From: Octopus sinensis
Taxonomy: Eukaryota
Direction of reading: 5' to 3'
NCBI RefSeq assembly: GCF_006345805.1
Contig: NC_043026.1
Coordinates: 4,774,001-4,838,000 of the forward strand
Length of the DNA stretch: 64,000 bases
Shown here: in pieces, positions 1,798-29,645 of the stretch
How the letters are laid out: each line of letters starts with the position of its first letter
Numbering within the stretch: the first letter of the stretch is position 1
Translations under genes and position numbers: made by a program
Notes under the pieces: model-generated
What the model was told of the DNA's origin: nothing
Seen by the model: only the letters and a program-made list of their open reading frames with translations
Database searches by the model: none

Positions 1798-1806
1798 ATA
1801 TGTGTG

Positions 1807-1838
<32 letters not shown>

Positions 1839-1986: not shown

Positions 1987-2017
<31 letters not shown>

Positions 2018-2080
2018 TATATATATATATATGTGTGTGTGTGTTTATGTACATATATATATATATGTTTATATATATAT
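1560..2080. repeat. (TA)n-rich microsatellite
   Basis: Interrupted TA/TG dinucleotide tract; it is the source of the YIYI ORFs in the track. Confidence 0.97.
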
Positions 2081-2099
2081 CATCATCATCATCATCATC

Positions 2100-2320: not shown

Positions 2321-2321
2321 G

Positions 2322-3772: not shown

Positions 3773-4563
3773 TATTTTTATATATATATGTATGTTTATA
3801 TATATTTATATTTATATATAGATATATCTATGTTTATATATATACAAATATACATATATACACACATACATATATACATATATATATATGTATATATGTA
3901 TATACATACATATTTGTATATATATATTCAAACTATACTACTCAAAACACCATATCTTCCCATTGCTTCCCCCAAGAAGGTGTCTATATGTGTTTAAAAT
4001 GATGAAGTATGTATGCATCTATAATATGTGCATGTATGTATGTGTATATGTGTGCCTCTGTGTGTGTGTGTGTGAATGACACTTAATTTTATGGGGGATG
4101 TTTTGCTTGCACATGCGATCATACTGCCCCCACATTCAGACTGCGACCCACATTGACACTTGATACCTTGTCTTGGCTTGTCTCTGGATCATGTCAATAG
4201 GGGGCAAAGGATCTGTAAGGGTCAGCCAAGCCTTATTGGACTTAAAATTGTTGGTTGTACAATCATTAGGTGAGGGTCATTTACGATGCCTGATCAATTA
4301 GGAGGGCCCTGCGGCGTGCATGAAGGCCACAGCTGCGAATCCGAATAAAGCTGACCATGAACACAATGCTACTTAGAACGGTCCTTGCAGACATTTCGCA
4401 TGGTAGATGGTCAGTGATGGTCTTCTTTGCTCATGAGTGGATAGCCATCATCATCATCATCACCATATATACATGAATACATATATACATACATGAAGAA
4501 TTCATGTTTACATATATACATAACTACAGACAATCATACATACACAAATAAACCGAAACGTAG

Positions 4564-8000: not shown

Positions 8001-9425
8001 ATCATACAGTCTGCCTTTTACTCTGAGCGAGAGGCCTTTAGTCACCAGCAGAGATAAGAGCTCCCTAAACTTTGCCCAGGCTATTCTTACTCTAGCAGTT
8101 ACACTTTCAACGCACCCACCCCCACTACTGACTTGGTCACCTAGATAACAGAAGCCATCAACTACTTCTAGTTTTTCCCCCTGGAAAGTGACGGAAGTTG
8201 TTTTCTGCAGATTTTCAGAGGTTAATGCTCCCGAGCATCTGCCACATACAAAAAACTATCTTCCCAGTTAGCCTACCTTTGACATTGCTGCACCTCTTAT
8301 GTGTCCATAGCTTACACTGGGTACATCTTATAGTGTTTCTACCTACACCTTTTCTACAGATCGAGCAGGGCCATCTTCCTGAAGACATTTGTGGATTGTC
8401 TACCTTCCTACTTATTAGTACTTTGGTTTTAGCTAGGTTGACTCTAAGGCCCCTCGATTCTAAACCCTCCTTCCACACCTGGAACTTCTCCTCCAGTTCT
8501 GATAGTGACTCAGCAATTAGAGCAAGGTCGTCAGCATAGAGGAGCTCCCAGGGGCAACCTGTCTTGAATTACTCCGTAATTGCCTGTAGGACTATGATAA
8601 ATAGGAGGGGGCTGAGTACTGAACCCTGGTGGACCCCAACCTCCACTTTGAATTCTTCTGTGTACATGTTGCTAACCCTAACCTTACTTACGGCATCTCT
8701 GTACATGGCTTGCACAGTCCTCACCAGCCATTCATCTATCCCTAGTTTCCTCATTGACCACCAGATAAGGGATCGGGGGACCCTATCAAAAGCTTTCTCC
8801 ATGTCAACAAAAGCCAGGTACAGGGGCTTATCTTTGGCTAGGTATTTCTCCTGCAGCTGCCTTACCAGGAATATAGCATCCATGGTACTTTTCCCTTGCA
8901 CGAACCCAAACTGCATCTCATCTAAACTAACTCTCTCTCTAATTAGTTGGGCTATGACCCTCTCCGTAACCTTCATTACTTGATCCAACAGCTTGATACC
9001 TCTGTAATTATTTGTATCTAGGGCATCACCTTTACCTTTGTAGCAGTTGACTAGTATGCTGCTACACCAGTCATTGGGTATGACTCCTTCGTGTATCACC
9101 TGGTTGACTATACGGGTGACTAGGCTATAGGCGACACTGCCAGATATTTTGAGCATCTCTGCAGTAATTCCTGATGGGCCTGGGGCTTTCCCTGTCTTCA
9201 TGCTTCTAATTGCCTTAGCTACCACGGAACTATCAACTCGGATAGCTGGTCCCTCTGTTGGGTCAACATTCGCAGACTCTCTTTATCCCATTCATTTTCT
9301 TTATTCAGCAACCTTTCATAGTGGCATCTCCAAACCTCTCTCTTTGCATCCTCATTTAGCGCAAGTGAACCATCATCCATGCGAACACACTTCTCTCCTA
9401 CCACATCACGATTCTCTCTCACACA
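8000..9425 (-). mobile_element. RTE-clade LINE fragment containing the RT domain (frameshifted)
   Basis: ORF 8569-9225 has GKAPGPSGI, NYRGIKLL, FVDMEKAFDRVPR, GVHQGSVLSPLLF. The next frame supplies the ADDL region, then GLRVNLAKTKV and the RTE-type WPCSICRKGVG zinc motif. Confidence 0.92.
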
Positions 9426-10185: not shown

Positions 10186-11496
10186 TATATATATTTATAT
10201 ATATATATACATACAAAAAACATACATAAATGTATACTACATATGTATGTGACGGTGGCACGTAAAATGCATCATTCAAGCATGCTTGATGCCAGCACTG
10301 CCTCAGTGGCCCTGATGCCTGTGGCACATAAAAAGCACCGACTTCATTCTCGGAGTGGTTGGCATTAGGAATGGTATCCAACTGCAGAAACTTTGCCAGA
10401 TGAGATTGGGGCCTGGTGCAGCCTACTTGTTTCCAGCCCTCAGTCAAACCGTCCAATTCATGCCAGCATGGAAGCAGACGTTAAAGACGACGACGATGAT
10501 GATGATACATATATGTCTCTATGTATGTATGTATTTGTAGCCCTCTTAGACATGCCAGTGGCCCTTCAGACAGCTATAGTTACCAGCTATGCTAACGATG
10601 CAAAATTATCAGAGGCAATAAAAAAATCAAAGATGACATCGCAAGATTACAGCTGGGGCAAACGACTGAGAAAAGCTGCAAGACCATGATGGTGCTCCAG
10701 CATGACCACAGCTACATGTGTAAAGAAACGTGTAAAAGAATAATATATCTGTGCGTGTGTGTATTATGAAACCGTATCAAAACTTTCCTGAGTCATTGAC
10801 TCACACAGCACAAATTATCGACTCATAAGGCCAGTTTCCCTTATTCTGTCATGTATATATTTCCCCCAATGAAGAGGAAGGTGGGCCATCGTTGGATTCC
10901 TTGATTTTACTAGCCGAATAAATTGGGGGAAGTGGAATGAAGAGTGTTGCTCAAGAAAACAATCTATCACCCAATCCAGGAATTGAAACCTTAATCTTAG
11001 TATCATGAGTGCAACACACTAAAAATGTGCATCCACACACTCGCACAGACACACATACACAAACATACATGTACAGGGGTATAAATATACACAAGTATAC
11101 ACCCTTATATATACATATATAATTAAACATATATATATATACACATAAATACATACACACACACAGTTACAGTAAATATATATATGCATATACATACATA
11201 TATATATACACACACACACAAACACACACATATATATATATATATAATATATATATATATTCATGTATGTGTGTGTCACTGTTTGCCCTCCCATCCCCCC
11301 ACAAACGGTTGACAACCGATGTTGGTGTATTTACATCCCCACACTTAGCAGTTCACCAAGAGAAACCGATAGAACAAGTCCTTGGCTTACAAAGAATATG
11401 TCCTGGGGTCGATTTCTCTGAACCTTTAAGGCAGTGCTCCAGCGTGGCCACATTCAGAAGATTGAAACAAGTAATAGAATAAAATTATACATAGGT

Positions 11497-11880
11497 GTAG
11501 GAGTGGCCGTGTGGTAAGTAACTTGTTTACCAGCCACATGGTTCCGGGTTCAGTCCCACTGCGTGGCACCTTGGGCAAGTGTCTTCTACTATAGCCTCAG
11601 GCCGACCAAAGCATTGTGAGTGGATTTGGTAGACAGAAACTGAAAGAAGCTCGTCGTATATATGTATATATATATGTGTGTGTGTATATGTTTGTGCGTG
11701 TGTGTGTGTCCCCAACATCGCTTGACAACTGATGCTGGTGTGTTTACGTAACATAGCGGTTCAGCAAAAGAGACCGATAGAATAAGTACTGGGCTTACAA
11801 AGAAAAAGTCCTGGTGTCGATTTGCTCGACTATAGGCGGTGCTCCAGCATGGCCACAGTCAAATGATTGTAACAAGTAAA
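11497..11880 (+). mobile_element. tRNA-derived SINE, family B (CCTTGGGCAAGTGTCTTC core)
   Basis: tRNA-like head GTAGGAGTGGCCGTGTGGTAAG..GGTTCAGTCCC. Further copies at about 17780-18150(-) and 47720-48330(-). Confidence 0.8.
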
Positions 11881-12117
11881 AGAGTAAAGAATATACAAAC
11901 AGGTGTGTGTGTGTGTATGTATCCATGTATAAACATATATATGGATAAATACATATATATGTGTGTGTATATATAGATATACATGTGTGCATATATGGGT
12001 GTATATATGTAAGGAAGTTAGTGTATACTTTGATACTTTGATACTTTGATAGGTTTCGGCCATTATTGGCCCAGGCCATGTCCAACTTAATAGCACCACC
12101 TGGTGAAGTCTTTCAAG

Positions 12118-15100
12118 TCAGAATTTGGGCACTATGGCCCACTCAAGTAGAGAGTTATTGTTTACAGAGACATATCCGGGTGTAGGGGGTTTATCCGGGA
12201 TTTCTTGAAGGAATCTGTCCAAAGACTTCTTGAACCCTATAGGGTCAGTTTCTGTTTTAATGTGTTTTGTTGTAATGTTAAAGAGTGCGGGGCCAATTGA
12301 GGTGAAATAATTGTGCCGTATTGTTGTTATGAGATGAGAGTGCGATTTTTGTTTTGGGCGGATGGCACGGGGCCCAAGCCTTGGATGTACCTTAAAGGTG
12401 ATGCCAACATCATTTGGGCAATGCTGATGGAATATTTTCCACATCATGCAGATGATGTAGCGCTCACGACGACGTTGGAGAGAATAAAGTTTTAGCTTTT
12501 CTAGTCGACCCCAATAGTCGAGGCCTGTCATGCCATCTATCTTTTTTGTGATTGCCCTTTGAGGTGCTTCAACTTTTATGATACCTTGTATTGTGTGGGG
12601 AGACCACAGTGGACAACAGTATTCAAGGTGGGGTCGGGCAAAAGTGGAGAAGAGAAGGATAATGGTGTGGATATCTCTCGACTGGAAAGTTCTGAGAATC
12701 CAGGAACACATTCTGCGGGCCATGTCAACTTTGGTGTTTATATGAGTGGCCCAGCTTATGTTGTTGTCCACAATTACTCCCAAGTCTCTGATGTTGTTGG
12801 ACGCCACGAGAGTTTCACCTGAAGGAAGGGAGTATGGGAGTTTCAGGGCATCCTCATTTCCAAAGTGGATTAACTCAAATTTATCCTCGTTCAGCAGCAT
12901 ATTGTTTTTTTCTGCCCATTGGATAACATCCAGTAGATCTGACTGAAGGCATGTCCGGTCACTCGCCTCATTTATGACCTTCTGTAGCTTGGAATCATCT
13001 GCAAAAATTTTTATGTTGCTGTGCTTGATGATGTCATTAATGTCATTAATGTAAATGATGAAAAGAAGTGGGCCCAGCACAGTGCCTTGCGGAACGCCAC
13101 TACTGACTTTGGCTGGGCTTGATTTTACCCCTTCAACTACAACATGTTGAGATCTGTCTGTCAGGAAACACTTGATCCATTTCAGTAACTTTTCAGAGAC
13201 ACCAATGTTGGATAGTTTTTTCAATAGGATCTTGTGATCGACCCTGTCGAAGGCCTTACTGAAATCAAGGTAGATGACATCGGTGTTGGAGCCCTCTCCC
13301 AAAGCTCTCAAAATGTCATCAAAGTGATGCAGGAGCTGCGTTAGGCAGTCCCTTCCATTACGGAACCCATGTTGGTTGGAGATCAGCCATCTGTTGCTTT
13401 CCAGAAATTGGGTTATTCGAGATCTCACCACCCTCTCAAATACCTTGATGATATGAGAGGTGAGTGAGATCGGACGGTAGTTCACTGCAAGGGACTTGTT
13501 TCCCTTTTTGAAAACTGGGACAACAGACTGGGACAGAAGGTTTTTTGGAATATAGCCAGCATCCAGTGAGTTTCTCCACAGATTAGCAAGGGGAGATGCA
13601 AGTTGGTGTCGACATACCTTCAGGACACAAGCAGGGAACCTATCGGGGCCTACTGCTGAATTGTGTTTTATTTCGTTTATCGCCGCTAAGACATCAGGGG
13701 CACTAAACGTTATGTCCGATATAGTGTGTTGGGGGTTGACATCACTGATACAGCCCAGATCGGCCATATCAGGATTGCTGAAAACAGAGCAGTATTGTTT
13801 CTGCAGTATCTCGGCCATGGATTTGGCATTATCTTGGAGAGTGCCAGTTTCGTCAATTAGAGGGCCAACAGTGGAGACAGTGACCCTGCGTTTCCTCGCA
13901 AATGAAAAGAACACTTTGGGGTTGAGTTTGATTTTTTCAATGGCCCACTTCTCCTCAGCTGATCTTTGGTTATTGATGAGGGTCTTCATGCATTGTTGGA
14001 GGTTATATTTTTTGGATTCAAGCAGTGCGATAGCCGTCGAATGTGTGTGTTGCTGTTGGCAGTACTTTAGTTTGTTAATTATTTTGTTTGTTCTTTTTAT
14101 TTTTCTGATAATGGTTTTTCTGTTTTGGGGGATTCTGCACTTTTTTTTCACAGGTCTTGGTGGGGAGTGTTTTGCACATATGTCTGTGACGGTGTCTACA
14201 AAGATCTGCCAAGATGTTTTATGGTTGGTGGAGATGTGTGTATGTGTAAAGGACCAGTCAACATGTGATAGCTCGTTCCTGATTGCATCCCAGTTGGCAT
14301 TATGGAGATCCATGTTGTCAAATGGGTGGGCTGGAGGGAGGTCACTAGGATTAGCTTTCGGCTGGTAGAATTTCATGTTACAGAGAACCATGTCATGGTC
14401 TGAAAGAAGGGTTTTTTCCACTGTAACGTTATGTATAGTGTTAGTGTGGTTACTAAACACTAGGTCCAAAATGTTCTGATGTCTTGTTGGTGCAAGGACA
14501 AGTTGGGACAAGAAAAACTCATTCGTAAAGTCGAAAAGTGACTCTGCTGCTTCTTTGTCAGCGGTTGAGGCGGGAGTGCTTGGTTTCAAACAGTTTGTAG
14601 TCCAGTCAACACAGGGTAGATTGAAGTCTCCCATCATGAGTATGTTGCTAGAATGGCACTGTTGAATAAAGCACTTAATGCTGTTGAGGCATTCTTTAAA
14701 GCACAGTATGGGTGTTTGGGGCGGCCTATAGAGCCCAATTACTGTCAGGTCATTGGCTTTGTTGTGCACGGTGACTGATTCACAGTAGCCGTTGGAGAAT
14801 ATACTATTTCCATCTGCCGTAAATGAATCATGCAGGAAAATGGCAGTTCCACCCTTCCTCCTGCCGATACGATCCGTGCGGATGGTTGTGAAATTCTTCA
14901 CTCTCACTTCGGCTTCCAAGTGGGAGTTGTCAAGGTGGGTCTCAGTGAGAATGAAGAAAGGGATGTGGTGTGAATGGTTACCAACCCAGTCTTCAATGAA
15001 TTGGACCTTCCATTTTTGTGCATTGATGGAAGGGCTGACACCTTGTGCATTGAGTAGGAATGTGGAGGTTAGTGTAGTGGCTGGTTTTGACTGTTGCAGG

Positions 15101-15453
15101 GGGCTTGGATTTTTTGTGTGTGTTAGTGGCAGCAATGTGGGGAATTGGTGCACTGGGGTAATAGCATAGGATGGTGTTGAGTGATGGCTTGAATGTTTTG
15201 TGTATCTTTTGCCATGTTCAACATGGCTAAAAAGAATTTTCCTGCTTAGGGAGCAGTTTTTGGCTGGAGGTGTGGATAGGGTTGTAGTTTCCACTTTTGT
15301 TGTTGTTGTTTTTGTGTCTTCCTGAAAAGACTGGACCAGCATTACTGCAGCATGGTGTGTTTCTATTTTTATTTTATTCAGGTTTGTGTGTTGGCTTGAG
15401 CCCCGTTTCTGTTTGTGCGTCGGGTCCCTGGAAGATGAGTGAAGGACAGTCAC
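12118..15453 (-). CDS. LINE ORF2: APE endonuclease + reverse transcriptase, uninterrupted (first ATG at 15342, 1074 aa)
   Basis: EN motifs LNAQG, TETHL, GLYRPP, MGDFNLP, LDLVFSN, SDHD. RT motifs NYRPISLTS, YLDFSKAFD, GVPQGTVLGP, IFADD. CR1-type RPHLEYCCPLWSP and LYSLQRRRER. Confidence 0.97.
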   Translation of the reverse strand: MTVLHSSSRDPTHKQKRGSSQHTNLNKIKIETHHAAVMLVQSFQEDTKTTTTKVETTTLSTPPAKNCSLSRKILFSHVEHGKRYTKHSSHHSTPSYAITPVHQFPTLLPLTHTKNPSPLQQSKPATTLTSTFLLNAQGVSPSINAQKWKVQFIEDWVGNHSHHIPFFILTETHLDNSHLEAEVRVKNFTTIRTDRIGRRKGGTAIFLHDSFTADGNSIFSNGYCESVTVHNKANDLTVIGLYRPPQTPILCFKECLNSIKCFIQQCHSSNILMMGDFNLPCVDWTTNCLKPSTPASTADKEAAESLFDFTNEFFLSQLVLAPTRHQNILDLVFSNHTNTIHNVTVEKTLLSDHDMVLCNMKFYQPKANPSDLPPAHPFDNMDLHNANWDAIRNELSHVDWSFTHTHISTNHKTSWQIFVDTVTDICAKHSPPRPVKKKCRIPQNRKTIIRKIKRTNKIINKLKYCQQQHTHSTAIALLESKKYNLQQCMKTLINNQRSAEEKWAIEKIKLNPKVFFSFARKRRVTVSTVGPLIDETGTLQDNAKSMAEILQKQYCSVFSNPDMADLGCISDVNPQHTISDITFSAPDVLAAINEIKHNSAVGPDRFPACVLKVCRHQLASPLANLWRNSLDAGYIPKNLLSQSVVPVFKKGNKSLAVNYRPISLTSHIIKVFERVVRSRITQFLESNRWLISNQHGFRNGRDCLTQLLHHFDDILRALGEGSNTDVIYLDFSKAFDRVDHKILLKKLSNIGVSEKLLKWIKCFLTDRSQHVVVEGVKSSPAKVSSGVPQGTVLGPLLFIIYINDINDIIKHSNIKIFADDSKLQKVINEASDRTCLQSDLLDVIQWAEKNNMLLNEDKFELIHFGNEDALKLPYSLPSGETLVASNNIRDLGVIVDNNISWATHINTKVDMARRMCSWILRTFQSRDIHTIILLFSTFARPHLEYCCPLWSPHTIQGIIKVEAPQRAITKKIDGMTGLDYWGRLEKLKLYSLQRRRERYIICMMWKIFHQHCPNDVGITFKVHPRLGPRAIRPKQKSHSHLITTIRHNYFTSIGPALFNITTKHIKTETDPIGFKKSLDRFLQEIPDKPPTPGYVSVNNNSLLEWAIVPKF

Positions 15454-15664
15454 TCAGCAGACATGTTCTCTCACGTTGGGAATACCGGCAGATTTTGGGA
15501 CTCCGAGTTGTGTGTGTTTTGAATTTAGATTTACTATTTGGTGGTGTTGATGTTATTGTGGGATGCGTGCTTTGGCCTTGGCCGGTAGTGCGTCTAGTGC
15601 CGGGTAGATGCGTGAAGATGCAGTCACTATTTGTGCAGAGTCTCTGGTGCAGTGAATAGCGGCA
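15435..15664 (-). CDS. LINE ORF1, C-terminal part: two CCCH-type zinc fingers (frame not listed in the ORF track)
   Basis: 15664-15608 reads C-RYSLHQRL-C-TNSD-C-IFT-H. 15490-15435 reads C-RYSQRERT-C-LLSD-C, with one base missing before the His. Both are followed by LPGTRR once that base is restored. Confidence 0.75.
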
Positions 15665-15784
15665 TATTTGGGGATTTCTTGTTTGTGCCGTGGGGGGGGC
15701 GCATTCTGCTTCCTATGTTTCTTTAAGTTTTTGTTACTGCAGTAGTATTGAGGTGGTGATGTGGGGGAAGAGGGCAGTGGTTTC

Positions 15785-16333
15785 TTATTTGGTTTTCTGT
15801 TGGTATTTTTGGTGATAGAAGACGATGGTGGCAGCGGTGGTGATGATGATGATGATATTGTGGTGGTTGCCGTGAGAGCGGTGAAAAGAACTGGCATTTA
15901 GTGAATCATCTAGTAAGCTAGAGTTGAGGAGTGGCTGTTGTTGTTCTTGTTGCTGTGGCTGTTGTTGTTGTTGTTGTGCTTGACCGATGTTAGGGTCAGC
16001 CATTGTGCTGGGAACCAGGAGTGGCTCATTCTGTTGTTGTTGTTGTTGTGGCTGCTGATTTTCTAGCTGTTGCTGTTCTTGAACTGTGAAAATTTGAAGA
16101 AGCTTTTCATAATGGCCTTTTGTCAGTTTGAAAGATACTTCGATATGTTTCAGTTTGCTATGAATCTGTTTGACGGATCGTGTGTTGACCACTTGTGATG
16201 TTTTTTCGGCAATCTCATTCAAACACAAAACATTTAGATTTTCTGTTTGGGAAAGAGAGAACCAAGTGTTTAGTAAAACATCAATTTCGTTATCAGACCA
16301 ATTTCGTCTGTTGCAGGCCTGCAAGTTAGTCAT
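15785..16333 (-). CDS. LINE ORF1, N-terminal part: Myb/SANT-like (trihelix-type) domain + polyQ
   Basis: RRNWSDNEIDVLLNTW...IAEKTSQVVNTRSVKQIHSKLKHIEVSFK fits the W-x3-E-x3-LL-x2-W...IA...R(S/T)xxQxxxK pattern. Located directly upstream of ORF2 on the same strand. Confidence 0.75.
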   Translation of the reverse strand: MTNLQACNRRNWSDNEIDVLLNTWFSLSQTENLNVLCLNEIAEKTSQVVNTRSVKQIHSKLKHIEVSFKLTKGHYEKLLQIFTVQEQQQLENQQPQQQQQQNEPLLVPSTMADPNIGQAQQQQQQPQQQEQQQPLLNSSLLDDSLNASSFHRSHGNHHNIIIIITTAATIVFYHQKYQQKTK

Positions 16334-17291: not shown

Positions 17292-17747
17292 ATATATAGG
17301 AAAAAGTAAAGAGGAAAAAACTACAGAAGGCTTAAATGTTAAAAAATATATATATTTGCATCAATATGTCTGAAGAATATTAGAAGATTAAAAAAAATTT
17401 TTTGTCTTATAATGACATAATTTAAAAGAAAGACCGGTTTCGCGTGTAGCTTTTCAAATTTCTTGCGACGTTATGTTTATGTTGAATAGAGTTTTCGTTA
17501 TTTAGAACTTCCCTTATTTAGAACTCTCCTGAACATAAACGAAAACTCTATTCAACATAAACATAACGTCGCAAGAAATTTGAAAAGCTACACGCGAAAC
17601 CGGTCTTTCTTTTAAATTATGTCATTATAGACAAAAAATTTTTTTTTTTAATTTTCTAATATTCTTCAGACATATTGACGCAAATATATATATTTTTTAA
17701 CATTTAAGCCTTCTGTAGTTTTTTCACTCTTTACTTTTTCCTATATA
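17292..17747. repeat. Inverted repeat, arms about 208 bp, 38-bp spacer; Penelope-like, each arm with a degenerate hammerhead
   Basis: 17292-17499 is the reverse complement of 17538-17747. The spacer holds TTATTTAGAACT twice. 17573-17611 reads AAGAAA-TTTGAAAA-GC-TACAC-GC-GAAAC-CG-GTC-TTTCTT. Confidence 0.85.
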
Positions 17748-18243
17748 TATATTTATATATATATCTTTTATTTATTAATTTGTTTTTGTCATTTGTCTGC
17801 TGCCATGCTGGAGCACCGCCTTTAGTAAGACTAGTGCTTATTCTATAGGTCTCTTTTGCCGAACCGCTAGGTTACGGCGACGTAAACACACCAGCTTCGG
17901 TTGTCAAACGATGTTGGTGGGGACACAGACACACAAACATACACATACATATACATGTATATATATATATATATACACACATATATATGATGGGTTTCTT
18001 TCAGTTTCCGTCTACAAAATTGACTCACAAGCCTTTTATCAGCCCGAGGCTATAGTAGAAGACACTTGCCCAAGTTGCCACGCAGGGGGACTGAACCCGG
18101 AACCATGTGGTTGGTAAGGAAGCTACTTACCACACAGCCACTCTTGTGCCTATAAAATGAAAAGACACACGAAATACCATTAAACATTTTGGCCGGCAGG
18201 CAAACGATTCTGCCAGCTCCTATATATATATACATACATATAC

Positions 18244-18562: not shown

Positions 18563-18602
<40 letters not shown>

Positions 18603-18632
18603 TCAAAATAAAAACATGATGCCAAGGATTCA

Positions 18633-18710
18633 GCGGTACATATGTTTCGGGCCTTTATTAGACTGACTTATAACAATGCATAATGTGTGTCTATGGCCTT
18701 CTTCAGCCGC
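18633..18710 (-). ncRNA. Type I hammerhead ribozyme (left arm)
   Basis: GCGG-CTGAAGA-AGGCC..(TAGAC/GTCTA)..GGCCC-GAAAC-ATAT-GTA-CCGC. Helix I is GCGG/CCGC, helix III is the palindrome ACATATGT, triplet GUA; predicted cut between 18637 and 18636. Confidence 0.8.
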
Positions 18711-19488
18711 GCACAATTACTACTTGAAGGACATGTATTACATCATAGATTCTACGTTGGGGATGCAAATCCTCTCAGTCGCGTACGACATAGTGGGGCA
18801 CCAGCACAAAAATGAAGTGTCCATCTCGTCTTTCACTCAATGTAGAATGAGGAAGCTTGGATGTTGAGGTAATATAAATAAATAAGCGAGTAAATAAATA
18901 TATAAATACACACAGACGTGAAAGAATAGGGATAAATGTAGAGGGGTGAGAATTAAGGAGGAAGGCTAGAGGAATATAAAAAAATATACAAAGATAAAAA
19001 AGTAAAAAAGTATAAACGTAGTAATATAAAATATAAATATATAAAAGAATATATTCTTTTATATATTTATATTTTTACATCCCTTTATATCTTTTTATAT
19101 CTTTTATATATTTTGTTATATATTTTTTAATTTCTATGTTCTTTTATAATTTTTATATTTCTTTATATATTTATATTTTATATTACTACGTTTATACTTT
19201 TTTATCTTTGTATATTTTTTTATATTCCTCTAGCCTTCCTCCTTAATTCTCACCCCTCTACATTTATCCCTATTCTTTCACGTCTGTGTGTATTTATATA
19301 TTTATTTACTCGCTTATTTATTTATATTACCTCAACATCCAAGCTTCCTCATTCTACATTGAGTGAAAGACGAGATGGACGCTTCATTTTTGTGCTGGTG
19401 CCCCACTATGTCGTATGCGACTGAGAGGATTTGCATCCCCAACGTAGAATCTATGATGTAATACATGTCCTTCAAGTAGTAATTGTGC

Positions 19489-19566
19489 GCAGCTGAAGAA
19501 GGCCATAGACACACATTATGCATTGTTATAAGTCAGTCTAATAAAGGCCCGAAACATATGTACCGC
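19489..19566 (+). ncRNA. Type I hammerhead ribozyme (right arm)
   Basis: Same motif as the left arm but helix I is GCAG/CCGC (one mismatch); predicted cut after 19562. Confidence 0.75.
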
Positions 19567-19694
19567 TGAATCCTTGGCATCATGTTTTTATTTTGATTAA
19601 TTTACTCCACCACCTACACCACCTAATGGTATACACAGGTGCTTACATTTATCAAGTACTCACCCTGAATTTTTATATATATATATATATATAT

Positions 19695-21385: not shown

Positions 21386-21599
21386 AGGATTATTTTTTTT
21401 TCTCAGCCGTTTTACTAGAATTCAAGGCATTTGGCTACTGTTTCTAGCACAGGTAGGTAGGAACCGATGGAGGGTACACGCGTCCTTGTTTCCCGGCCCT
21501 CAACATTTAGGATAGGAATAAACAAAAGAAGCCCCGGAATAACATGTTTGTTAAGAGACGGAAAGACAGTTTGTTTCATATGAGAAACAATGCAATTCT

Positions 21600-22080
21600 G
21601 TGGGTATTTAGTTGTTGTTTCTAGCATGATGTGAGTCTACTTATAGGATAATATTTTATAATTAATTCTAAAAGTGTCCTTCATATTTATACACATAAAC
21701 ACTACACGGAAATTGAAAGGTTCTTGTTTGTTATGTCTACCATGATGTGAGACCCCACCTGTAGTACAATATTCTTACAGATGCTTCGTCCTCAAGTGTC
21801 CTTCAATTTTTATACACATCACATCACAGATTTAAGGCCATGTGGTTTCTATTTCTCGCAATATGTGGGACCATATATTGTTCATTATATTTTAGAAATG
21901 GTTAAGTGTCCTATTTTCATACGAGAAATCGAAACCAATTTGAAGGCTCTTGCTTAATGTAGTCTAGCATGAAGAATGACCATATATGGCACAAATTCTT
22001 AAGGTGTCCTTCCAATTTGTATAAAAATCAGCGCAAATTTTAGGGTAGTTGACTGTTATTCCTAGCGTGACGCAAAATCA
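21600..22080. repeat. Degenerate about 115-bp tandem repeat (CTAGCATGA...AAGTGTCCTTCA)
   Basis: Motif pair recurs 4-5 times here, again at about 36290-36660, and at 53240-53690. Confidence 0.7.
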
Positions 22081-22869
22081 CATGTCGCGAATTTCTTTCC
22101 GTAAATCTTTCTTAAATTCTTGTTCAATACCCACAGTATTTAATTATATGAATTATGAACTACAAAATTAATTAATTTTCTTTCGAATCCAAATTTATAA
22201 CTGTTTGAAGGGAGGTAATTCGATACCTTTCGAAGACAGTTGTAGCCTCCCTTGGAACTACAAGATTTTTGACTGGGCGGTAGTGTGTGTGTGTGTGTGT
22301 GTAACATTCGTGGTGGGAGGGAAGAAGAGAGGGAAAAGAAAAATATGTCAGAGAGGGATAGCGAGAGGGGGAGGGACATAAAATGAAAGAAAAATGTTCA
22401 GTAAAAGAGAGAGAAAAGCTGAGAGAGAGAGAGAGAGGGAGAGCTAATGATAAAGAGAGAGAAAAAGCAAGAAGAAAGCAAGAGAGGTGGAGTAAAGTAA
22501 AGTGGGAGGAAGAGAGAGAGAGAGAGATTATGTGTGTTCGCCATCTAAATATTGCATAAGGGGAAGAACAACACAAATTTGTGACGACTTAGCTGTTATT
22601 TCCAGCATTATATGAAACCATATATGAAAAAAGTATTTTTATGGAATGCCTTTTACGGGGGTCGGCTGAAAGGTCCATAGGCTGACCAAGATTCTCTCAC
22701 GGAAGGTGACCAAATGGGGTTTATTTTCCGATATAGTCCCCCCTTGAAGTCCCCACATTTCTTCTAAACAAAACAAGAACAAAGATCACTTTTCTCTCTG
22801 CCTCCCTTCTTCCTTTCTTTATCCCTTTTTCTTCTCTTTTCTTTCTCTCTCTTACCTTCTCTCATCCCT

Positions 22870-23265
22870 TTGGTGTTGCAGTGCTTGGCTCCGTTTGCTG
22901 AAGAAGCGCTCATCCTGTTGAGCAACAACAACAAAAAAAGGCATCGACAGAAGATATGACATCATCATCACTGCGATACTGGTTCCCAGCCAAATGTTAC
23001 TTCATGTTGGGGATCAGATGGGGCCAAATCAGGAGAATAGGGAGGGCGATTAACCTGTTCAAAGCCACAGTCACGCACGGCAACCATTGAAACGAAGGAC
23101 TTGTGTGCTGGAGCATTGTCTTGATGAAACAATTCCCCATTCTTCAGTTTTCCTTGGCGTTTGGTCTTGAGAGCATTCCACAACTGCCTCAGGAAGTTGG
23201 CAAAGCACTCTCCATTGGTGGTTTTGGCCCTTTATTCCTCCGCCACCTTCTTTTAAAATCATAAA
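22870..23265 (-). mobile_element. Mariner transposase catalytic-domain relic (copy B about 54465-54845)
   Basis: LFHQDNAPAHKS..PPYSPDLAPSD, the diagnostic mariner motifs. Confidence 0.9.
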
Positions 23266-23479
23266 ACTGGCATCTGGAAATTGGCCCCTTGGGAAAAACT
23301 ACAAACAGCAAACCATCCCGAAATATTAAAATGAAATCCATCTTACAGAAAAAAACTAAACAAAACAAGAAAAAAGATCGCTTGTCTCTCTATCTCCCTT
23401 CTTCCTTTCTTTATCCCTTTTTTTCTCTTTTCTCTTCTTTCTCTCTTACCTTCTCTCATCGCATCTTTTCTCTTTTTCT

Positions 23480-23540
<61 letters not shown>

Positions 23541-24193
23541 TAACAAAGCAAAACAGATTTCAACAAAAGACAAAGTTTCCTGTAAAACTCAAATCTGACA
23601 AGTTCCAATGAATGAGATGAAAACACTAATAACGAATTATCCAAAATTCTCACAAACTCCCATTTTTAAAGCATAAAATCTGTACATCACTACAAATAGT
23701 ATATTTATCTATCTGTCTATCTGTCTATCTACCTATCGATATATCTATATCTCTCTCTCTCTATCCATCCATCTGTCTGTCTGTGTGTGTGTATATATGC
23801 TGTCTTGACCGAGCTAATTTTCTGTTAATGGTATATGAATGGTTATCTCCCTTTAGTTGAATGTCTGCGTTAATCCATCCGTGTGCGTAGTTAGGTGGGT
23901 AGGTATGTGTATACAGGGGTTGATGAAAAGTACCCGGCATGACCACTGCTGCAGAGGACTGGCTAGAGACCGAACCAGCTGTGTTCTTTTTCCCAGGGCT
24001 TAGAAAAACTGAAGGGCCACTGCAACAAGTGTGTGAATGTGAGAGGGGAGAATATGTTGAATAGAATGCTAATGAAGTGATTCGTCTCTATTTTGTTTTA
24101 CCTGAAGCCAGAAACATTTCAATACTCCCTCGTCTGTAGACACACATACACACACACACACGCATGCACACATACACAAACGCATACATATAA

Positions 24194-25680
24194 GTGGACC
24201 CTTTCAGGCTGACCCGAACAGTGTTGGGACATGGGAGGACCAAATCAGGGAAATGGACCAGCTCCAGAGAAGAGGCAGAAGCTTTTCTGGGTGGAGGGGG
24301 AGAGATCTACAACCATAACCTCAGAAATCAAGCTCCTAATGTTAACCCAAAAGTCTGTAGAGCTGAAATACCAGGAAATGAGTTCAACGTCAGTTGTCCA
24401 TTCTGGAAAGAAGTGGGACGAGTGGTTGTGAAAGGGGCCAGATCAGGATCAGCTCCTGTCCAAGTGGTGTACCTTATAAAGTATACAAGAAATGCCCATG
24501 GCTCCTTCAGAGGCTGTGGACACTATTCTGAAAGATCTGGACAAATGGTATCATTCCACCGAAAGGAAGTTTTGTGCTGCCAAAGGAAGAAAACTCATCA
24601 GCCATTAACAAATTCAGGACCATTCTCCTTCCTGAGTGTTGAGGGAAAAACCTTCTGTACTGACCAAAAAAGGGTGACCTCATACAATGAGTATATAAAC
24701 ACCTCTATCCAGAAAGGTAGGGGTCTCAGGTTTCTCGGGCTGTCTGGAACACAACCAGCTGATTCGGGAGGCCAAAAGAAGTAAAGGTGACATGACAGTG
24801 GTTTGGCTGGATCTGGAAAATGCATGTGGATCAATTCCTCACAGCCTCATATATGCAGCCCTTGACTGTTACCATATTCCTCACCTGTTGAGGGAATAAT
24901 CAGCAATCACTTTGGAGGCATCGAGTTATGTTTCAGAACAGCCCACTTCACAAGTCAGTGGCAAGACCTTGAGAAAGGAATCATAACTGGTTGCACAATC
25001 TCCCTCATTCTTTTCATCATGGCTGTGAATCTCCTGGTGTCAGCTGCTGAAAATGAAGGCCAAGGACCAACAATGGAATCAGGCAGCTGTCAGCAGCCAA
25101 TAAGGGGTTTCATGGATGATATCACGGTAACAACTACAACCCATGTGGAGGCAGAAATGGTGCTGACCTCATTTGAACACATGGTAATATTCGTTAGAAA
25201 GAAGTTTAAGCCTCCCAAATATAGGGGTATGGTAACCAGAGGAGGTAAAGTAACAAACAAAATTAAGCTACAAGTGCAAGGAGAAGCCATACCATCAACA
25301 GAGGAAAATCTGATTAAATGTCTTGGAAAGATGTTTTAGAAGTCGCTCTGTCAGAAGCAATGTCACCAATTCTGTGAAGCAAGCAGAAGAGTGGCTGAGG
25401 AGGACTGAAAGATCAGGGTTTCCAGAAAAATACAGGGCATGGCTCTACCGACATGGACTAGGGTGGAAAGGAAGGTAAATAAATACCTCCAAAGATGGCA
25501 AGACGTTCCCTCAAGCTTCGCTTCAATAGGTCTGTACATAAGATCTGAACAATCACAACTTCCCCTGTCATCTGTTGCGGAGGAATTCAAAGTAGTAAAA
25601 TGTCATGTTGTAATGATGTTCAGGGAGTTGAAGAATGAGCTTGTCAGACATGCAAATATAACGACAAGATCTGGGTGAAA
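24194..25680 (+). mobile_element. Decayed RLE-type non-LTR retrotransposon RT region (R2/NeSL/Hero-like); copy B 55793-57280
   Basis: DPFRLTRTVLG..KSG, WLDLENACGSIPH, GIITGCTISLILFIMAVNLL, IRGFMDDITV; several stops and frameshifts. Confidence 0.7.
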
Positions 25681-25986
25681 GTGGGTAGCTAGCACTATGA
25701 AATCTGGCAGTATGTATAATACTACTGCTGGGTGGCACTGGGTAAAATCTGAAAGTGGATGAGCTTCATACTGTTCTCTACTACGTCCCGAACAGAATAT
25801 ACCATAACTAAAGATGTATATATATATATACACACACATTATTTACAATGCCCGATAGAGCTCCTACAGAAAATTTGTCTCTTAGGGAGAGCAAGGATTA
25901 TCAGGAGGGTCCTAAACTCTTGAAAGACTGCTGAAAACTTGAGGATACCTAAGGTCACAGGTAGTAACCATAGTAACCATAGCATA

Positions 25987-27031
25987 TCATAAAAACCCAT
26001 GTAATTTATGCACTTTTTTTTCACAAAAATGAAAATAAATTTTAGGGGCTGCATGAATTACATGAGTAGATTGTTTCCAGGATTTATTTTGAAATTTCTT
26101 TTATTGGAAAAAGATGTACGAAACGTAAACATTTGTTCCGGAAGTTGACTCATTTAATGTCAGAATAGTTTTTTACAGAGAAAATAATGGCTTAAATACG
26201 CATAATGAAGTTGACTTCTGTTTATGCTGGACGGTATAATGCTTACTTTTTCTGTATAAATTTACTAAAACCATTAAATGGTTAACTAGTTTTTGAAGTC
26301 TGACGTTCATGCTGGTAAACACGGTCCGGGCCATATTTTACATTGCTTGGAGCTTCTATCTATCGCAATGGAGCACATATTTAATTTCTCCTTCACAGCA
26401 AACGATTCATAAGTTCTGCCCATACTGACAATAAAAGTAATGACAAATGTTTAAGTTTGCTTGACATTTTATAAGTGTGAAAGGGATTAAAATTTCGATC
26501 CTCCATATCAAAGGTTCTGACTAGACTCTGCAGAAAAGAATTCTGTTTCCATCATCAGTTTGATTGGTCACCTTCCTTTGTCGGTTGAGTAAAGTGTCAT
26601 CCAAGCTGATGTTTATTGCTAATTAAACTTAATTTGCAACACTTTATCCGCTTTGTTTTTGTTGATAATTCTTATCAAAAACTTTTCCTGTGATCCTGAT
26701 TTGAGAAGACATACAAAAGTATGCTAAAGATCGGACATAATCTCTCGTGGCCAAGAAATGTAAAATAAAGTTATTATAAAACAACAAAATACTTTGTAAT
26801 TTAACAGATTTCAATGTGATACCTGTTAATTAGAAATTATTTTTATTTAAAGAAAATTTAATAAAATCTAATCATAAGTGAAATTATGCTAAATACAACT
26901 AAATTGAAAACCTTTTACCCCTGGCCATATTGGTAATTCTGAAAACTTTTGGGTGCTTTTTTTAACAATTTTTATCCTGGAAATCACCTGCATAAATTAC
27001 ACAGGTGCGCAAATTACATGGGTTTTTACAG
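25987..27031. mobile_element. Non-autonomous TIR element, pogo/Tc1-like (copy B 57589-58640)
   Basis: Left TAAAAACCCATGTAATTTATGCAC and right GTGCGCAAATTACATGGGTTTTTACAG are inverted repeats, with TA on both flanks. Confidence 0.75.
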
Positions 27032-27049
27032 TAATAATTTTACCTTGTC

Positions 27050-27600
27050 CTTACCCTTAGTGCAAGTTTTGAAGAGTGCAGTTCATTTTTAACAGCTATT
27101 TTTTCAAAGTTATAATGGAAGTGACAAAGGAGCATATTCGGCATATTTTGTTTTATGAGTTCAATCAAGGCAACAACACAACGGAAAATGCGAGGAATAT
27201 TAATGCAGTGTATGGGGATTGGACAATAAGTGTAAGCCAGTGTCAACGGTGGTTCCAGAAATTCCGAGTCAGAAACTATAGCCTAGAAGACGAGTTTTGT
27301 CCTGGAAGATCTGTAGAGCTTGATGAGGACATCCTGCAAACCCTAGTGGAACAAAATCCCATTGTAACTGTTGAGGAGCTAGCAGAAACTTGGATTTGGT
27401 TACTCAACCATTCATCAACACCTGCGTGCCATTGAAAAAGTCAACAAATAGAGTCAATGGGTTCCTCACAAATTTTCCAAGTCTAATTGCACGCAGTGAG
27501 TGAATGTGTGCTCTTCTTTGCTGTCACATCTCACGAATGAACCATTTTTGGACTGAATAGTGACTGGAGATGAGAAATGGGTTCTCTATAAAAATGTCTA
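27050..27600 (+). mobile_element. Mos1-type mariner transposase N-terminal relic (copy B about 58660-59200)
   Basis: KEHIRHILFYEFNQG...CQRWFQKFR..NYSLEDE..PGR (HTH region), followed by a degraded RIVTGDEKWVLY. Confidence 0.9.
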
Positions 27601-27699
27601 TAAATAATGCCAAATCTGCGAAATCCATAGTTTACTGATTGGATCAACATATGATTTGATTCGATGTTCTACATGTAAAAATGACACAAAAATAATTTA

Positions 27700-28560
27700 A
27701 GAATAAACCAGCTTTATTTAGATTTCATAACGTCTTCAGAGAGAAAATGATGTAAAAGTAAAGATTATAGGCCACACAGTGAAGAAGATAAGTGATTGAG
27801 AAGACAGAGGGACAGATTCGGAGATAGAAAGACAGACAGGCTCTGACATACAGACAGATGGCTACAGTAGGCAGGAGAGGGACAACACAAGTGACATGAT
27901 GTTGGATAATTTGCAGGAACAAGTGGGGAAGAGTGGCGCAGGAATGATGGAATACACACAAGCGTAGTGAATAAATGATTTTTATTAGAAACTAGAATGA
28001 CCTGACATTTATTGATGTAAATTATAGGCCACGCAGTCAAGACGATATATAATTGAGAAGGCAGAAAGACAGACAGACAGACACTGACAAATAGATTCTC
28101 AGATCGGACTGAGACAAACAGACTGAGGGAGAGATAGAGAAACTGAGAGAGAGTAGTAAAGCTGTGACAGCTGAATTGAGAAGAGGAGGGAAGGATCATG
28201 AGGAATCTCATGGAAAGAGATAAACATAGGGGTGATGAGGTGTTAGAGTTTGACCTTCAAAGTACAAGAATGAGTGGGCAGGAGGGAAGAAAAGTGTGGG
28301 ACAGTTGGTGGAGGGGTGGGCGATTGTGGAAGGGTGAAGAGATGGCAAGTAGGCAACCTGCAATGATGCAAGACACATAGGGGAGTAGGAAGTGACTGAG
28401 AATTCAAAGCATCAGAAGAGTAATGATGACACAGTAGACAGGAGAGGGACAACAGAAGCGACATGATGTTGGATAATTTACAGGAACAGGTGGGGAAGAG
28501 TGGGGCAGGCATGATGGAATACATACAAGCGTAGTGAATAAAGGATTTTTATTAGAAATA
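27700..28560 (-). mobile_element. Possible decayed Penelope-like 3-prime region with about 135-bp direct repeats (copy B about 59320-60175)
   Basis: Direct repeat at about 27855-27990 and about 28430-28560. Weak similarity of FLYFEGQTLTPH to a GIY-YIG tail. Remnant CTGAAGA..GAAA on minus at about 27725-27740. Confidence 0.35.

Positions 28561-28986: not shown

Positions 28987-29645
<659 letters not shown>

What the first reader, a model, noticed from the sequence alone, without database searches (positions are those of the whole stretch)
15370..16333. LINE ORF1 with an unusual architecture: Myb/SANT-like domain + polyQ + tandem CCCH zinc fingers
Seen: ORF1 begins with a trihelix/Myb-SANT-like motif, then polyQ and Ser/Pro-rich linkers. 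In a frame the ORF track misses there are two duplicated C-x8-C-x4-C-x3-H fingers, each followed by LPGTRR. Three small frameshifts (about 15890, the G8 run at 15692-15699, about 15440) join them into one ORF of about 320 aa. Known: the usual CR1/L2/Jockey ORF1 modules are PHD, RRM + CCHC knuckles, esterase or L1-type. This Myb/SANT class is typical of Harbinger accessory proteins and host trihelix factors. Inference: a captured DNA-binding domain paired with CCCH RNA-binding fingers would be an ORF1 type I do not recognise. It could tether the RNP to specific DNA or autoregulate the element.
Basis: partly seen in the sequence, partly recalled or inferred. Interest (0 to 1): 0.78.

Follow-up and report, generated by a model that had tools for sequence, protein, structure and literature searches.

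The report
LINE ORF1 with Myb-like domain and CCCH fingers
A decayed first gene of a CR1-like jumping element really does join a Myb/SANT-like domain to CCCH zinc fingers, and the same module recurs in other copies, one of them attached to an unrelated reverse-transcriptase gene, so it is a real but modest new variant of a known kind of retrotransposon protein.

Summary
On the minus strand a CR1-like LINE (intact ORF2 15453-12118, octamer-repeat 3' tail) is preceded by a broken ORF1. ORF1 has a Myb_DNA-bind_4-like domain, a polyQ and Ser/Pro linker, and two duplicated C-x8-C-x4-C-x3-H fingers, each followed by LPGTRR.

It is not a chance adjacency. Three contigs from three other sequencing runs carry the same Myb + polyQ ORF. 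One has two fingers. One has a finger followed by an EN+RT ORF2.

- **Fingers are not new.** They match the third CCCH finger of the PHD-like + 3xCCCH ORF1 found in this ORF2's nearest relatives. The novelty is a Myb-like domain where those relatives have the N-terminal helical region, the PHD-like motif and fingers 1-2.
- **ORF1 is longer than reported.** It probably ran to a stop at 15125-15123 (about 400 aa), overlapping ORF2. That needs about five frameshifts and one stop, not three frameshifts.
- **The module has moved.** The linked ORF2 in the other copy is only 25% identical to this one, while the ORF1s are about 40% identical (fingers 74-77%). This implies exchange between LINE lineages.

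DNA or chromatin binding by the Myb part is inferred; the structure search was inconclusive. Why ORF1 is broken while ORF2 is intact is unexplained.

The parts
12025..16333 (-). CR1-like LINE copy, from the ORF1 start codon to the 3' repeat tail. The 5' UTR and exact 5' end, upstream of 16333, were not defined.
   Evidence: ORF layout; 3' tail. No convincing target-site duplication was found; only a TA-rich 12-mer matched.
15785..16333 (-). Open 182-aa first segment of ORF1 (frame 0): Myb-like domain, Q-rich stretch, and the start of the linker.
16109..16309 (-). Myb/SANT-like (Myb_DNA-bind_4-like) domain, ORF1 aa 9-75.
   Evidence: Pfam E=2.6e-5, 25 bits against a 27-bit cut-off. Relative P0077 scores 31.7 bits. 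A protein scan hit multi-Myb_DNA-bind_4 proteins at E down to 1.2e-9. The AF2 model has three helices, pLDDT 78.
15929..16081 (-). Q-rich / polyQ stretch, ORF1 aa 85-135.
   Evidence: Read. Also present in P0077, P0078 and L007.
15850..15897 (-). Interval holding frameshift 1 (frame 0 to frame 1).
   Evidence: Bounded by the stops in frames 0 and 1. The frame-1 peptide SSSSSPPLPPS is shared with L007.
15700..15849 (-). Ser/Pro/Thr-rich linker, read in frame 1.
15692..15699 (-). C8 homopolymer (G8 on the + strand): frameshift 2 (frame 1 to frame 0).
   Evidence: In L005 the homologous stretch INKKLHRHHHTTQ-KRNPIICRYS lies in a single frame.
15590..15664 (-). CCCH finger 1, CRYSLHQRLCTNSDCIFTH, plus LPGTRR.
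   Evidence: Read. zf-CCCH_2 E=0.035, below the cut-off. 74% identical to the L005 finger. Profile match to the third finger of relatives, E=2.5e-5.
15417..15490 (-). CCCH finger 2, CRYSQRERTCLLSDC-x-FTH, plus LPGTRR. It is split by frameshift 3, a 1-nt deletion that leaves an incomplete codon at 15445-15444.
   Evidence: DNA is 78% identical to L005 929-1016, with one gap. Protein is 77% identical to the L005 finger.
15374..15420 (-). A-rich linker holding frameshift 4 (frame 2 to frame 0) and an in-frame TAA at 15376-15374.
   Evidence: L005 reads KPNHYSNTTPCC where the window reads KPE*NKNRNTPCC.
15347..15361 (-). Conserved NTPCC peptide motif in the ORF1 linker (frame 0).
15229..15233 (-). 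T5 run: frameshift 5 (frame 0 to frame 2). L005 has T6 here.
15123..15236 (-). Conserved ORF1 C-terminal tail FFLAMLNMAKDTQNIQAITQHHPMLLPQCTNSPHCCH, then a stop at 15125-15123. It overlaps the head of ORF2.
   Evidence: Shared with L005 and L007. The ORF1 frame is the best conserved of the three: 18/36 identical, BLOSUM score 76, against 33 and -1 for the other frames.
12118..15453 (-). ORF2, open for 1111 codons. The first ATG is at 15342. The endonuclease is about 15000-14395 and the reverse transcriptase about 13503-12772.
   Evidence: The nearest relatives are 41-46% identical.
12025..12117 (-). 3' UTR ending in (ATCAAAGT)x3 at 12050-12025.
   Evidence: The relatives L001, L002 and L004 end in similar short tandem repeats.

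Best explanation
The region is the pseudogenised ORF1 of a CR1-like non-LTR retrotransposon.

**Ancestral architecture, N to C terminus (about 400 aa).**
- a Myb/SANT-like (Myb_DNA-bind_4) three-helix domain;
- a polyQ stretch and a Ser/Pro/Thr linker;
- one or two C-x8-C-x4-C-x3-H fingers, each followed by a basic LPGTRR motif;
- a low-complexity linker;
- a short conserved helix-like tail that overlaps the start of ORF2.

**Origin.** The fingers and the tail descend from the ORF1 of this ORF2's own relatives. Those relatives have an N-terminal helical region, a PHD-like Cys4-His-Cys3 motif, three CCCH fingers and a 'DFLxxLxxMK' C-terminal helix. In the window's lineage the N-terminal helical region, the PHD-like motif and fingers 1-2 were replaced by a Myb-like domain plus polyQ, and the last finger was duplicated. 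The whole ORF1 module, up to its stop codon, was also exchanged with a deeply divergent LINE lineage (L005).

**Likely working (inferred, not shown).**
- The CCCH fingers and basic motifs bind the element's RNA to build the RNP.
- The polyQ and the tail helix promote self-association.
- The Myb-like domain takes over the chromatin or DNA-contact role that the PHD finger is assumed to play in the sister elements.
- The ORF1/ORF2 overlap couples translation of the two genes.

**This copy.** It cannot make ORF1p: it has at least 3 and probably 5 frameshifts plus one stop. Its ORF2 is intact.
For: **Shown**
- LINE identity: endonuclease + RT ORF2, octamer-repeat 3' tail, relatives at 41-46% identity.
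- Myb identity.
- Recurrence in other copies:
  - L005 carries the Myb ORF (354-827), one finger, the tail up to '...PQCCH*', and ORF2 (1282-4563).
  - L007 carries Myb, polyQ, Ser/Pro linker, two fingers in the same order as the window, and the start of the tail.
  - L006 carries Myb and polyQ.
- Finger homology to relatives: L004 CKYSVKSNQCTNLECTYTHLKGTKR, L010 CTSSLTNKTCFLSECTYVHLAGTKR, and L001, L002, L011. Profile comparison gives E=2.5e-5, probability 75%.
- No Myb in those relatives' ORF1: the finger is the only profile match.
- Module exchange:
  - Window and L005 ORF1s are 41% identical overall. By part: Myb 38%, fingers 74-77%, tail 53%.
  - Their ORF2s are 25% identical.
  - L005's ORF2 is nearest to P0044 and P0046 (35%).
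  - P0045, another ORF2 of that cluster (31%), is preceded on its contig L009 by a coiled-coil + Baculo_FP_2nd ORF1.
  - The higher similarity stops at the ORF1 stop codon.

**Inferred**
- All functional roles.
Against: - Every copy seen has a broken ORF1, so an intact ORF1 of this type has not been observed.
- Only one copy with this ORF2 was available.
- The window's Myb hit is below Pfam's cut-off.
- Foldseek found no significant match. The top hits were homeodomains at E>1. A profile search against PDB sequences found nothing.
- The fingers do not reach any Pfam CCCH cut-off.
- The tail's similarity to the 'DFL' helix of relatives is by eye only; the profile comparison did not report it.
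Confidence: 0.72

Rival explanations
1. The window element is a one-off chimera. A Myb + CCCH ORF1 module from another family (L005/L007-like), already decayed, was joined to a young ORF2 of the PHD-type lineage by recombination or template switching. On this reading, 'this ORF1 with this ORF2' is not a propagating family.
For: - ORF1 carries about 6 disruptions in 1.2 kb, while ORF2 has none in 3.0-3.3 kb.
- Homopolymer density is equal in the two (7.4 vs 7.3 per kb), so indel-proneness does not explain the difference. By chance alone p is 0.024 down to 6e-4.
- No second copy with this ORF2 was found.
- ORF1 exchange between lineages clearly happens.
Against: - The fingers match the third finger of this ORF2's own relatives, and the tail resembles their 'DFL' helix by eye. 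This makes the module look native to this lineage.
- The boundary of similarity sits exactly at the ORF1 stop / ORF2 head, not at an arbitrary point.
- L005 shows the same pattern of broken ORF1 with intact ORF2. That fits a shared property of the module better than an accident at one locus.
Confidence: 0.18
2. The Myb-like ORF is a separate entity that merely lies upstream of a 5'-truncated LINE. It could be a relic of a Harbinger Myb-like accessory gene or a host exon.
For: Myb_DNA-bind_4 domains are typical of host trihelix-type factors and of Harbinger accessory proteins (established knowledge). The best non-LINE hits are host-like multi-Myb proteins.
Against: - The same Myb + polyQ ORF recurs in three other contigs from three sequencing runs at only 33-38% amino-acid identity. 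It is followed by the fingers in L005 and L007, and by a LINE ORF2 in L005.
- No transposase ORF stands out among the ORFs listed for 10-22 kb; those ORFs were not scanned against Pfam.
- In all copies the start codon lies 10-13 residues before the NWS[DE] motif.
Confidence: 0.03
3. The N-terminal domain is not a nucleic-acid or chromatin binder. It is a generic helical oligomerisation module that only resembles Myb/SANT, and the protein acts purely as an RNA chaperone through its fingers.
For: - The window's Pfam score is below the cut-off.
- There is no significant structural match.
- A profile search against PDB sequences gave only weak GCN4-type coiled-coil matches for residues 54-96.
- AF2 predicts long helices after the three-helix core.
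Against: - P0077 passes the Pfam cut-off.
- Protein-scan hits at E=1.2e-9 are to bona fide Myb_DNA-bind_4 repeats.
- The conserved positions fall on the NWSxxE...W helix 1 and the RxxxQIxxKxK helix 3, which correspond to the hallmark positions of the family (family knowledge).
Confidence: 0.15

Closest known systems
Type III (PHD-finger) ORF1 of CR1-like LINEs (Khazina & Weichenrieder classes, as used by Metcalfe & Casane 2014, PMC4120745)
   Same: - The same ORF2 lineage: relatives at 38-46% identity carry a PHD-like Cys4-His-Cys3 motif in ORF1.
- The window's fingers match their third CCCH finger plus the G-T-[KR]-R motif.
- Both have a short tandem-repeat 3' tail.
- In both, ORF1 sits immediately upstream of ORF2 or overlaps it.
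   Different: - The window's ORF1 has no PHD-like motif and no N-terminal helical region.
- A Myb_DNA-bind_4-like domain plus polyQ stands in their place.
- It has two copies of the last finger instead of three different fingers.
- The CCCH fingers themselves are not mentioned in that survey (0 occurrences of 'CCCH').
Myb-like DNA-binding domains in other LINE proteins: the R2 N-terminal zinc finger + Myb, and the Myb-like region of R1/TRAS-type ORF2 (from my own knowledge of the field)
   Same: A Myb-type helix-turn-helix domain carried by a non-LTR retrotransposon protein. In those elements it binds target DNA.
   Different: - In those elements it sits in the RT-bearing protein of site-specific elements and is of the c-Myb type.
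- Here it sits in ORF1, is of the trihelix / Myb_DNA-bind_4 type, and belongs to a CR1-like element with no evidence of site specificity.
Myb/SANT-like accessory proteins of PIF/Harbinger transposons, and host Myb_DNA-bind_4 proteins
   Same: The same Pfam family of domain. In Harbinger elements it binds transposon DNA and recruits the catalytic partner.
   Different: - A different class of element.
- No DDE transposase nearby.
- The domain is fused to CCCH fingers.
- No close donor was found; the best host-like hits are 28-30% identical.
Reticulate (modular) evolution of ORF1 in the Jockey superfamily (Metcalfe & Casane 2014)
   Same: The same ORF1 type is attached to distantly related ORF2s. 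This implies transfer of the ORF1 module between lineages within a host.
   Different: A new module type is involved. Here the breakpoint can be placed at the ORF1 stop codon, inside the ORF1/ORF2 overlap.

Membership tests
CR1-like LINE (Jockey superfamily) | ORF2 with an N-terminal AP-type endonuclease and a reverse transcriptase | tested here: met
   Exo_endo_phos_2 E=4.8e-14 and RVT_1 E=3.1e-30.
CR1-like LINE (Jockey superfamily) | 3' end made of short tandem repeats rather than poly(A) | tested here: met
   (ATCAAAGT)x3 at 12050-12025. Relatives have similar tails.
CR1-like LINE (Jockey superfamily) | RT groups with reference CR1 elements in a phylogeny | not testable with these tools
   No Repbase or Dfam references are available here. 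The PDB comparison shows only that it is not L1- or R2-like.
Type III ORF1 (PHD finger) | Cys4-His-Cys3 PHD motif in ORF1 | tested here: not met
   Absent from the window's ORF1. Present by signature in relatives: weak Pfam PHD hit E=0.011 in L002, and alignment A6.
Types I/II/IV ORF1 (RRM + CCHC, L1-type Transposase_22, esterase) | RRM, CCHC knuckle, Transposase_22 or esterase domain | tested here: not met
   No such Pfam hit for the 182-aa ORF or for the 404-aa reconstruction.
Myb_DNA-bind_4 (PF13837) | Score at or above Pfam's gathering cut-off (27 bits) | tested here: inconclusive
   The window scores 25.0 bits. The homologue P0077 scores 31.7 bits. P0078 scores 15.5 bits.
Myb_DNA-bind_4 (PF13837) | Three-helix bundle fold related to solved Myb/SANT/trihelix structures | tested here: inconclusive
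   AF2 gives three helices at pLDDT 78. The best Foldseek hits are homeodomains and one Myb domain, all at E>1.
Myb_DNA-bind_4 (PF13837) | Binds DNA | not testable with these tools
   Needs a biochemical assay.
CCCH zinc finger | Cys-Cys-Cys-His ligand pattern with standard spacing | tested here: met
   C-x8-C-x4-C-x3-H occurs twice. It is conserved in L005, L007, L004 and L010.
CCCH zinc finger | Pfam model above its cut-off | tested here: not met
   zf-CCCH_2 scores 15.1 bits against a 25.8-bit cut-off. In the relative P0006, zf-CCCH scores 22.5 against 20.5, but on other fingers.
Harbinger Myb-like accessory gene | Lies in a transposon with a DDE (PIF/Harbinger) transposase and terminal inverted repeats | tested here: not met
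   In the window, L005 and L007 the Myb ORF is followed by CCCH fingers, and in the window and L005 by a LINE ORF2. No transposase ORF stood out among the ORFs listed for 10-22 kb, but these were not scanned against Pfam.

The most novel reading that the evidence does not exclude
A previously uncatalogued ORF1 class for non-LTR retrotransposons: a Myb/SANT-like DNA or chromatin reader fused to CCCH RNA-binding fingers. It arose by swapping out the PHD finger of a CR1-type ORF1. It then spread as a cassette, cut at the ORF1 stop codon, to an unrelated LINE lineage in the same host group. The lineages that carry it now propagate with an intact ORF2 and a dead ORF1, that is, with ORF1 supplied in trans or dispensable.
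Probability: 0.3. Interest if true: 0.65.

Novelty: new variant of a known kind. Interest (0 to 1): 0.5.

Why it matters
**What ORF1 proteins are.** They are the least understood part of most LINEs, and only a handful of domain types are catalogued. A Myb/SANT-like domain standing exactly where sister elements carry a PHD finger is a natural experiment. It suggests that the N-terminal module of these ORF1 proteins is an interchangeable chromatin or DNA-contact device, while the CCCH fingers are the conserved RNA-binding core.

**Evidence for module exchange.** The same cassette sits in front of two ORF2s that are only 25% identical. This gives a clean, breakpoint-resolved example of ORF1 exchange between LINE lineages.

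**An open question raised.** The pattern of broken ORF1 with intact ORF2 in both lineages raises the question whether these elements need their own ORF1 at all.

**Scope.** None of this changes how LINEs are thought to work in general. It is of interest mainly to transposon specialists and to annotators of mollusc-type genomes.

Tried and rejected
- **Word-indexed protein search with the 320-aa reconstruction:** no hit.
- **Exact look-up of the window's ORF1 fragment and ORF2:** not on record.
- **Other copies in the window:** none of ORF1. There are only two unrelated, truncated RT fragments.
- **JGI metagenome scan with the ORF1 alignment:** 160 pattern matches, none confirmed.
- **Exact-pattern scans for the finger DNA in metagenome and viral contigs:** 0 matches.
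- **Structure route:** two AF2 models (aa 1-101 and aa 8-80) and two Foldseek searches of the PDB gave no match at E<1. A profile search against PDB sequences found nothing relevant.
- **Naming the host species of the related contigs:** no paper cites the run or assembly accessions. The 'mollusc/cephalopod' origin therefore remains unverified. It rests only on the TA-rich repeat landscape and on the marine origin of the ORF2 relatives.
- **Target-site duplication:** only a TA-rich 12-mer was found, which is not meaningful.
- **L008**, a relative of L005's ORF2, has no readable ORF1 upstream.
- **Sequencing error or homopolymer slippage as the cause of the frameshifts:** rejected, because ORF2 has the same density of runs and none is broken.
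- **Programmed frameshifting:** rejected, because the shifts fall at different places in the window, L005 and L007.
Full report
**1. What is in the sequence.**

The feature lies on the minus strand. ORF2 is open for 1111 codons (15453-12118), and its first ATG is at 15342. It carries an AP-type endonuclease (Exo_endo_phos_2, E=4.8e-14) and a reverse transcriptase (RVT_1, E=3.1e-30). The 3' UTR ends in (ATCAAAGT)x3 at 12050-12025. That kind of short tandem-repeat tail is typical of CR1-type LINEs, and it also appears in the ORF2 relatives L001, L002 and L004.

Upstream, frame 0 opens at ATG 16333 and runs for 182 aa.
- Residues 9-75 match Pfam Myb_DNA-bind_4 at E=2.6e-5 and 25.0 bits, against a cut-off of 27.
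- A Q-rich stretch follows (aa 85-135).
- After a shift to frame 1 comes a Ser/Pro/Thr linker.
- After the C8 run (15692-15699), back in frame 0, comes finger 1: CRYSLHQRLCTNSDCIFTH-LPGTRR.
- Finger 2 follows: CRYSQRERTCLLSDC-x-FTH-LPGTRR. It is interrupted by a 1-nt deletion at 15445-15444.
- The two fingers are 71% identical.

**2. Is the Myb-like domain real?**

A full HMMER scan of 1.84 billion representative proteins with aa 1-101 returned seven hits.
- Four are long fish proteins. The best of them, P0076, has six Myb_DNA-bind_4 repeats (Pfam E=1.4e-93).
- Three are short ORFs (P0077, P0078, P0079) that share the Myb-like domain; P0077 and P0078 also have the polyQ.
- P0077 passes Pfam's cut-off at 31.7 bits.

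Conserved columns fall on the NWSxxE...W first helix and the RxxxQIxxKxK third helix.

AlphaFold2 with this four-sequence alignment gives a helical bundle at pLDDT 78. Foldseek against the PDB gave no significant match. The top hits are homeodomains and one Myb domain, all at E>1, and a profile search against PDB sequences found nothing useful.

Sequence evidence therefore supports the assignment. Structural evidence is inconclusive.

**3. Is it linked to a LINE elsewhere?**

The three short ORFs come from Logan contigs of three different sequencing runs.
- **L005** (4569 nt) has the Myb ORF at 354-827. It then has one finger, CRYSLRERICLQQDCTFTHLPGTRR, followed by a long tail ending '...PQCCH*' near 1480. 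An EN+RT ORF2 of 1093 aa sits at 1282-4563.
- **L007** has Myb, polyQ, Ser/Pro linker and two fingers in the same order as the window (LCTNLECIFTH..., then RERVCLLQDCNFTHLAGT), followed by the start of the tail.
- **L006** has Myb and polyQ, followed by a piggyBac-like reading frame.

The Myb parts are only 33-38% identical to the window's. These are therefore old, independent relatives, not copies of one locus. Chance adjacency of a Harbinger relic is excluded.

**4. ORF1 is longer than reported.**

In L005 the finger frame continues through '...NTTPCCGDAG...NSFLDMLNLVKEIQRSILSIRRHHPPPSSLHTNYPQCCH*'.

The window has the same pieces split over frames:
- NTPCCSNAG in frame 0 (15361-15347);
- FFLAMLNMAKDTQNIQAITQHHPMLLPQCTNSPHCCH* in frame 2 (15236-15123).

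L007 has NSSFLSLRNLVKDIQKCVLAI at the matching position.

Of the three frames in this stretch, the ORF1 frame is the best conserved. It has 18/36 identities and a BLOSUM score of 76. The ORF2 frame scores 33 and the third frame scores -1.

The ancestral ORF1 therefore most likely had about 400 aa and overlapped the head of ORF2 by about 200 nt. In the window this reading needs five frameshifts:
- in 15897-15850;
- at the C8 run, 15692-15699;
- at 15445-15444;
- in 15420-15380;
- at the T5 run, 15233-15229.

It also needs one in-frame TAA at 15376-15374.

**5. Where the fingers come from.**

The window's ORF2 has no close relative in the protein collection. The best matches are 41-46% identical and come mostly from marine metagenome contigs.

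Their ORF1s were read from L001, L002, L004, L010 and L011, and from the N-terminus of the fusion protein P0006. All of them share a PHD-like Cys-rich motif and CCCH fingers. The five contig ORF1s have three fingers and a 'DFLxxLxxMK' helix; where the N-terminus is complete (L001, L002, L004) a helical region precedes the PHD-like motif.
- Pfam gives a weak PHD hit in L002 (E=0.011).
- Pfam gives a zf-CCCH hit above the cut-off in P0006.
- The third finger has the window's spacing and is followed by G-T-K-R. Examples are L004 CKYSVKSNQCTNLECTYTHLKGTKR and L010 CTSSLTNKTCFLSECTYVHLAGTKR.

A profile-profile comparison of the Myb-type ORF1s against these ORF1s aligns exactly this finger, at E=2.5e-5 and 75% probability, and aligns nothing else.

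So the CCCH part is inherited, and by eye so is the tail. The Myb-like domain plus polyQ replaces the N-terminal helical region, the PHD-like motif and fingers 1-2, and the last finger was duplicated in the window and in L007.

**6. Module exchange.**

The ORF2 of L005 is only 25% identical to the window's ORF2 over 916 aa. Its nearest ORF2s are P0044 and P0046 at 35%, a different cluster. P0045, another ORF2 of that cluster (31%), is preceded on its contig L009 by a coiled-coil + Baculo_FP_2nd ORF1.

The two ORF1s, by contrast, are much more alike:
- 41% identical overall;
- Myb 38%;
- fingers 74-77%, and 78% at the DNA level;
- tail 53%.

The higher similarity ends at the ORF1 stop codon. 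ORF1 normally diverges faster than RT, so this incongruence points to transfer of the ORF1 cassette between LINE lineages. It is the reticulate pattern described for Jockey-superfamily ORF1s (PMC4120745).

Because the finger is homologous to the ORF1 of the window's own ORF2 cluster, the cassette probably arose there and moved to the L005 lineage.

**7. An unexplained asymmetry.**

ORF1 (1.2 kb) carries about six disruptions. ORF2 (3.0-3.3 kb) carries none. Homopolymer runs of 5 or more are equally dense in the two, at 7.4 and 7.3 per kb. Neither slippage nor long-read error explains the difference. By chance alone p is 0.024 for three disruptions and about 6e-4 for six.

L005 shows the same trend. 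Its ORF1 has one frameshift and a TAA before the finger, while its ORF2 is open.

Two readings fit. These families may propagate with a dead ORF1, with ORF1 supplied in trans or not needed. Or the 5' part of the window copy may be older than the 3' part, meaning the copy is a recombinant. A multi-copy consensus from the host genome would decide between them. No tool here reaches that genome.

**8. Mechanism (inferred).**

By analogy with other ORF1 proteins and with CCCH proteins, the fingers and basic motifs would bind the element's RNA. The polyQ and tail helix would drive self-association. The Myb/SANT-like domain stands where sister elements have a PHD-like motif, which is a chromatin reader by family knowledge. 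It would therefore provide contact with DNA or chromatin at the target, or with the element's own DNA. None of this was tested.

**9. Novelty.**

The survey of Jockey-superfamily ORF1 domains does not mention Myb, SANT or CCCH at all. Two mollusc and octopus repeat papers do not describe ORF1 types. Repbase and Dfam could not be searched.

Myb-type domains are known in the RT proteins of R2 and R1/TRAS elements (my own knowledge), and ORF1 modularity is known. I therefore rate this as a new variant of a known kind. It is of moderate interest to transposon specialists.

The host organism was not identified.

Noticed in passing
window 21400-30966 and 53032-62575 (plus 32124-32455 / 62739-63072 and 35662-36185 / 63090-63610): A 9.6-kb direct segmental duplication at 97.3% identity, about 31.6 kb apart. 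It continues in pieces, which suggests insertions into the first copy.
   Followed up: partly
window 18597-19053 and 19154-19602; also 17292-17748: A large palindrome with 457-nt arms at 97% identity and a spacer of about 100 nt. Each arm holds the same 63-aa ORF (MHNVCLWPSSAAHNYYLKDMYY...). A second self-complementary stretch lies at 17292-17748.
   Followed up: no
window 5-1269 (minus strand) and 8518-9222 (minus strand): Two further LINE RT fragments. The first is 34-42% identical to ORF2 aa 322-743 and is cut by the window start. The second is about 29% identical. Neither has an ORF1.
   Followed up: partly
window 11309-11888, 17820-18151, 47719-48320: Copies of a SINE-like repeat at 82-84% identity. 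One abuts the 3' end of the LINE.
   Followed up: no
window 15123-16333 compared with 12118-15122: ORF1 has about six disruptions and ORF2 has none, although homopolymer density is equal. L005 shows the same trend. This is unexplained.
   Followed up: partly
L006 about 560-990: In this relative the Myb + polyQ ORF is followed by a reading frame that looks by eye like a piggyBac-type transposase, instead of fingers. It is probably an insertion into that copy.
   Followed up: no
L001 385-1818, L002 488-1897, L004 3622-5037, L010 1-1029, L011 59-1147: The ORF2 relatives share a widespread ORF1 with a PHD-like motif, three CCCH fingers and a DFLxxLxxMK helix. The ORF1 survey I read does not mention the CCCH fingers.
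   Followed up: partly
window 2321-2802 and 2854-3776: Tandem repeats with units of about 157 nt and about 335 nt at 97-100% identity.
   Followed up: no
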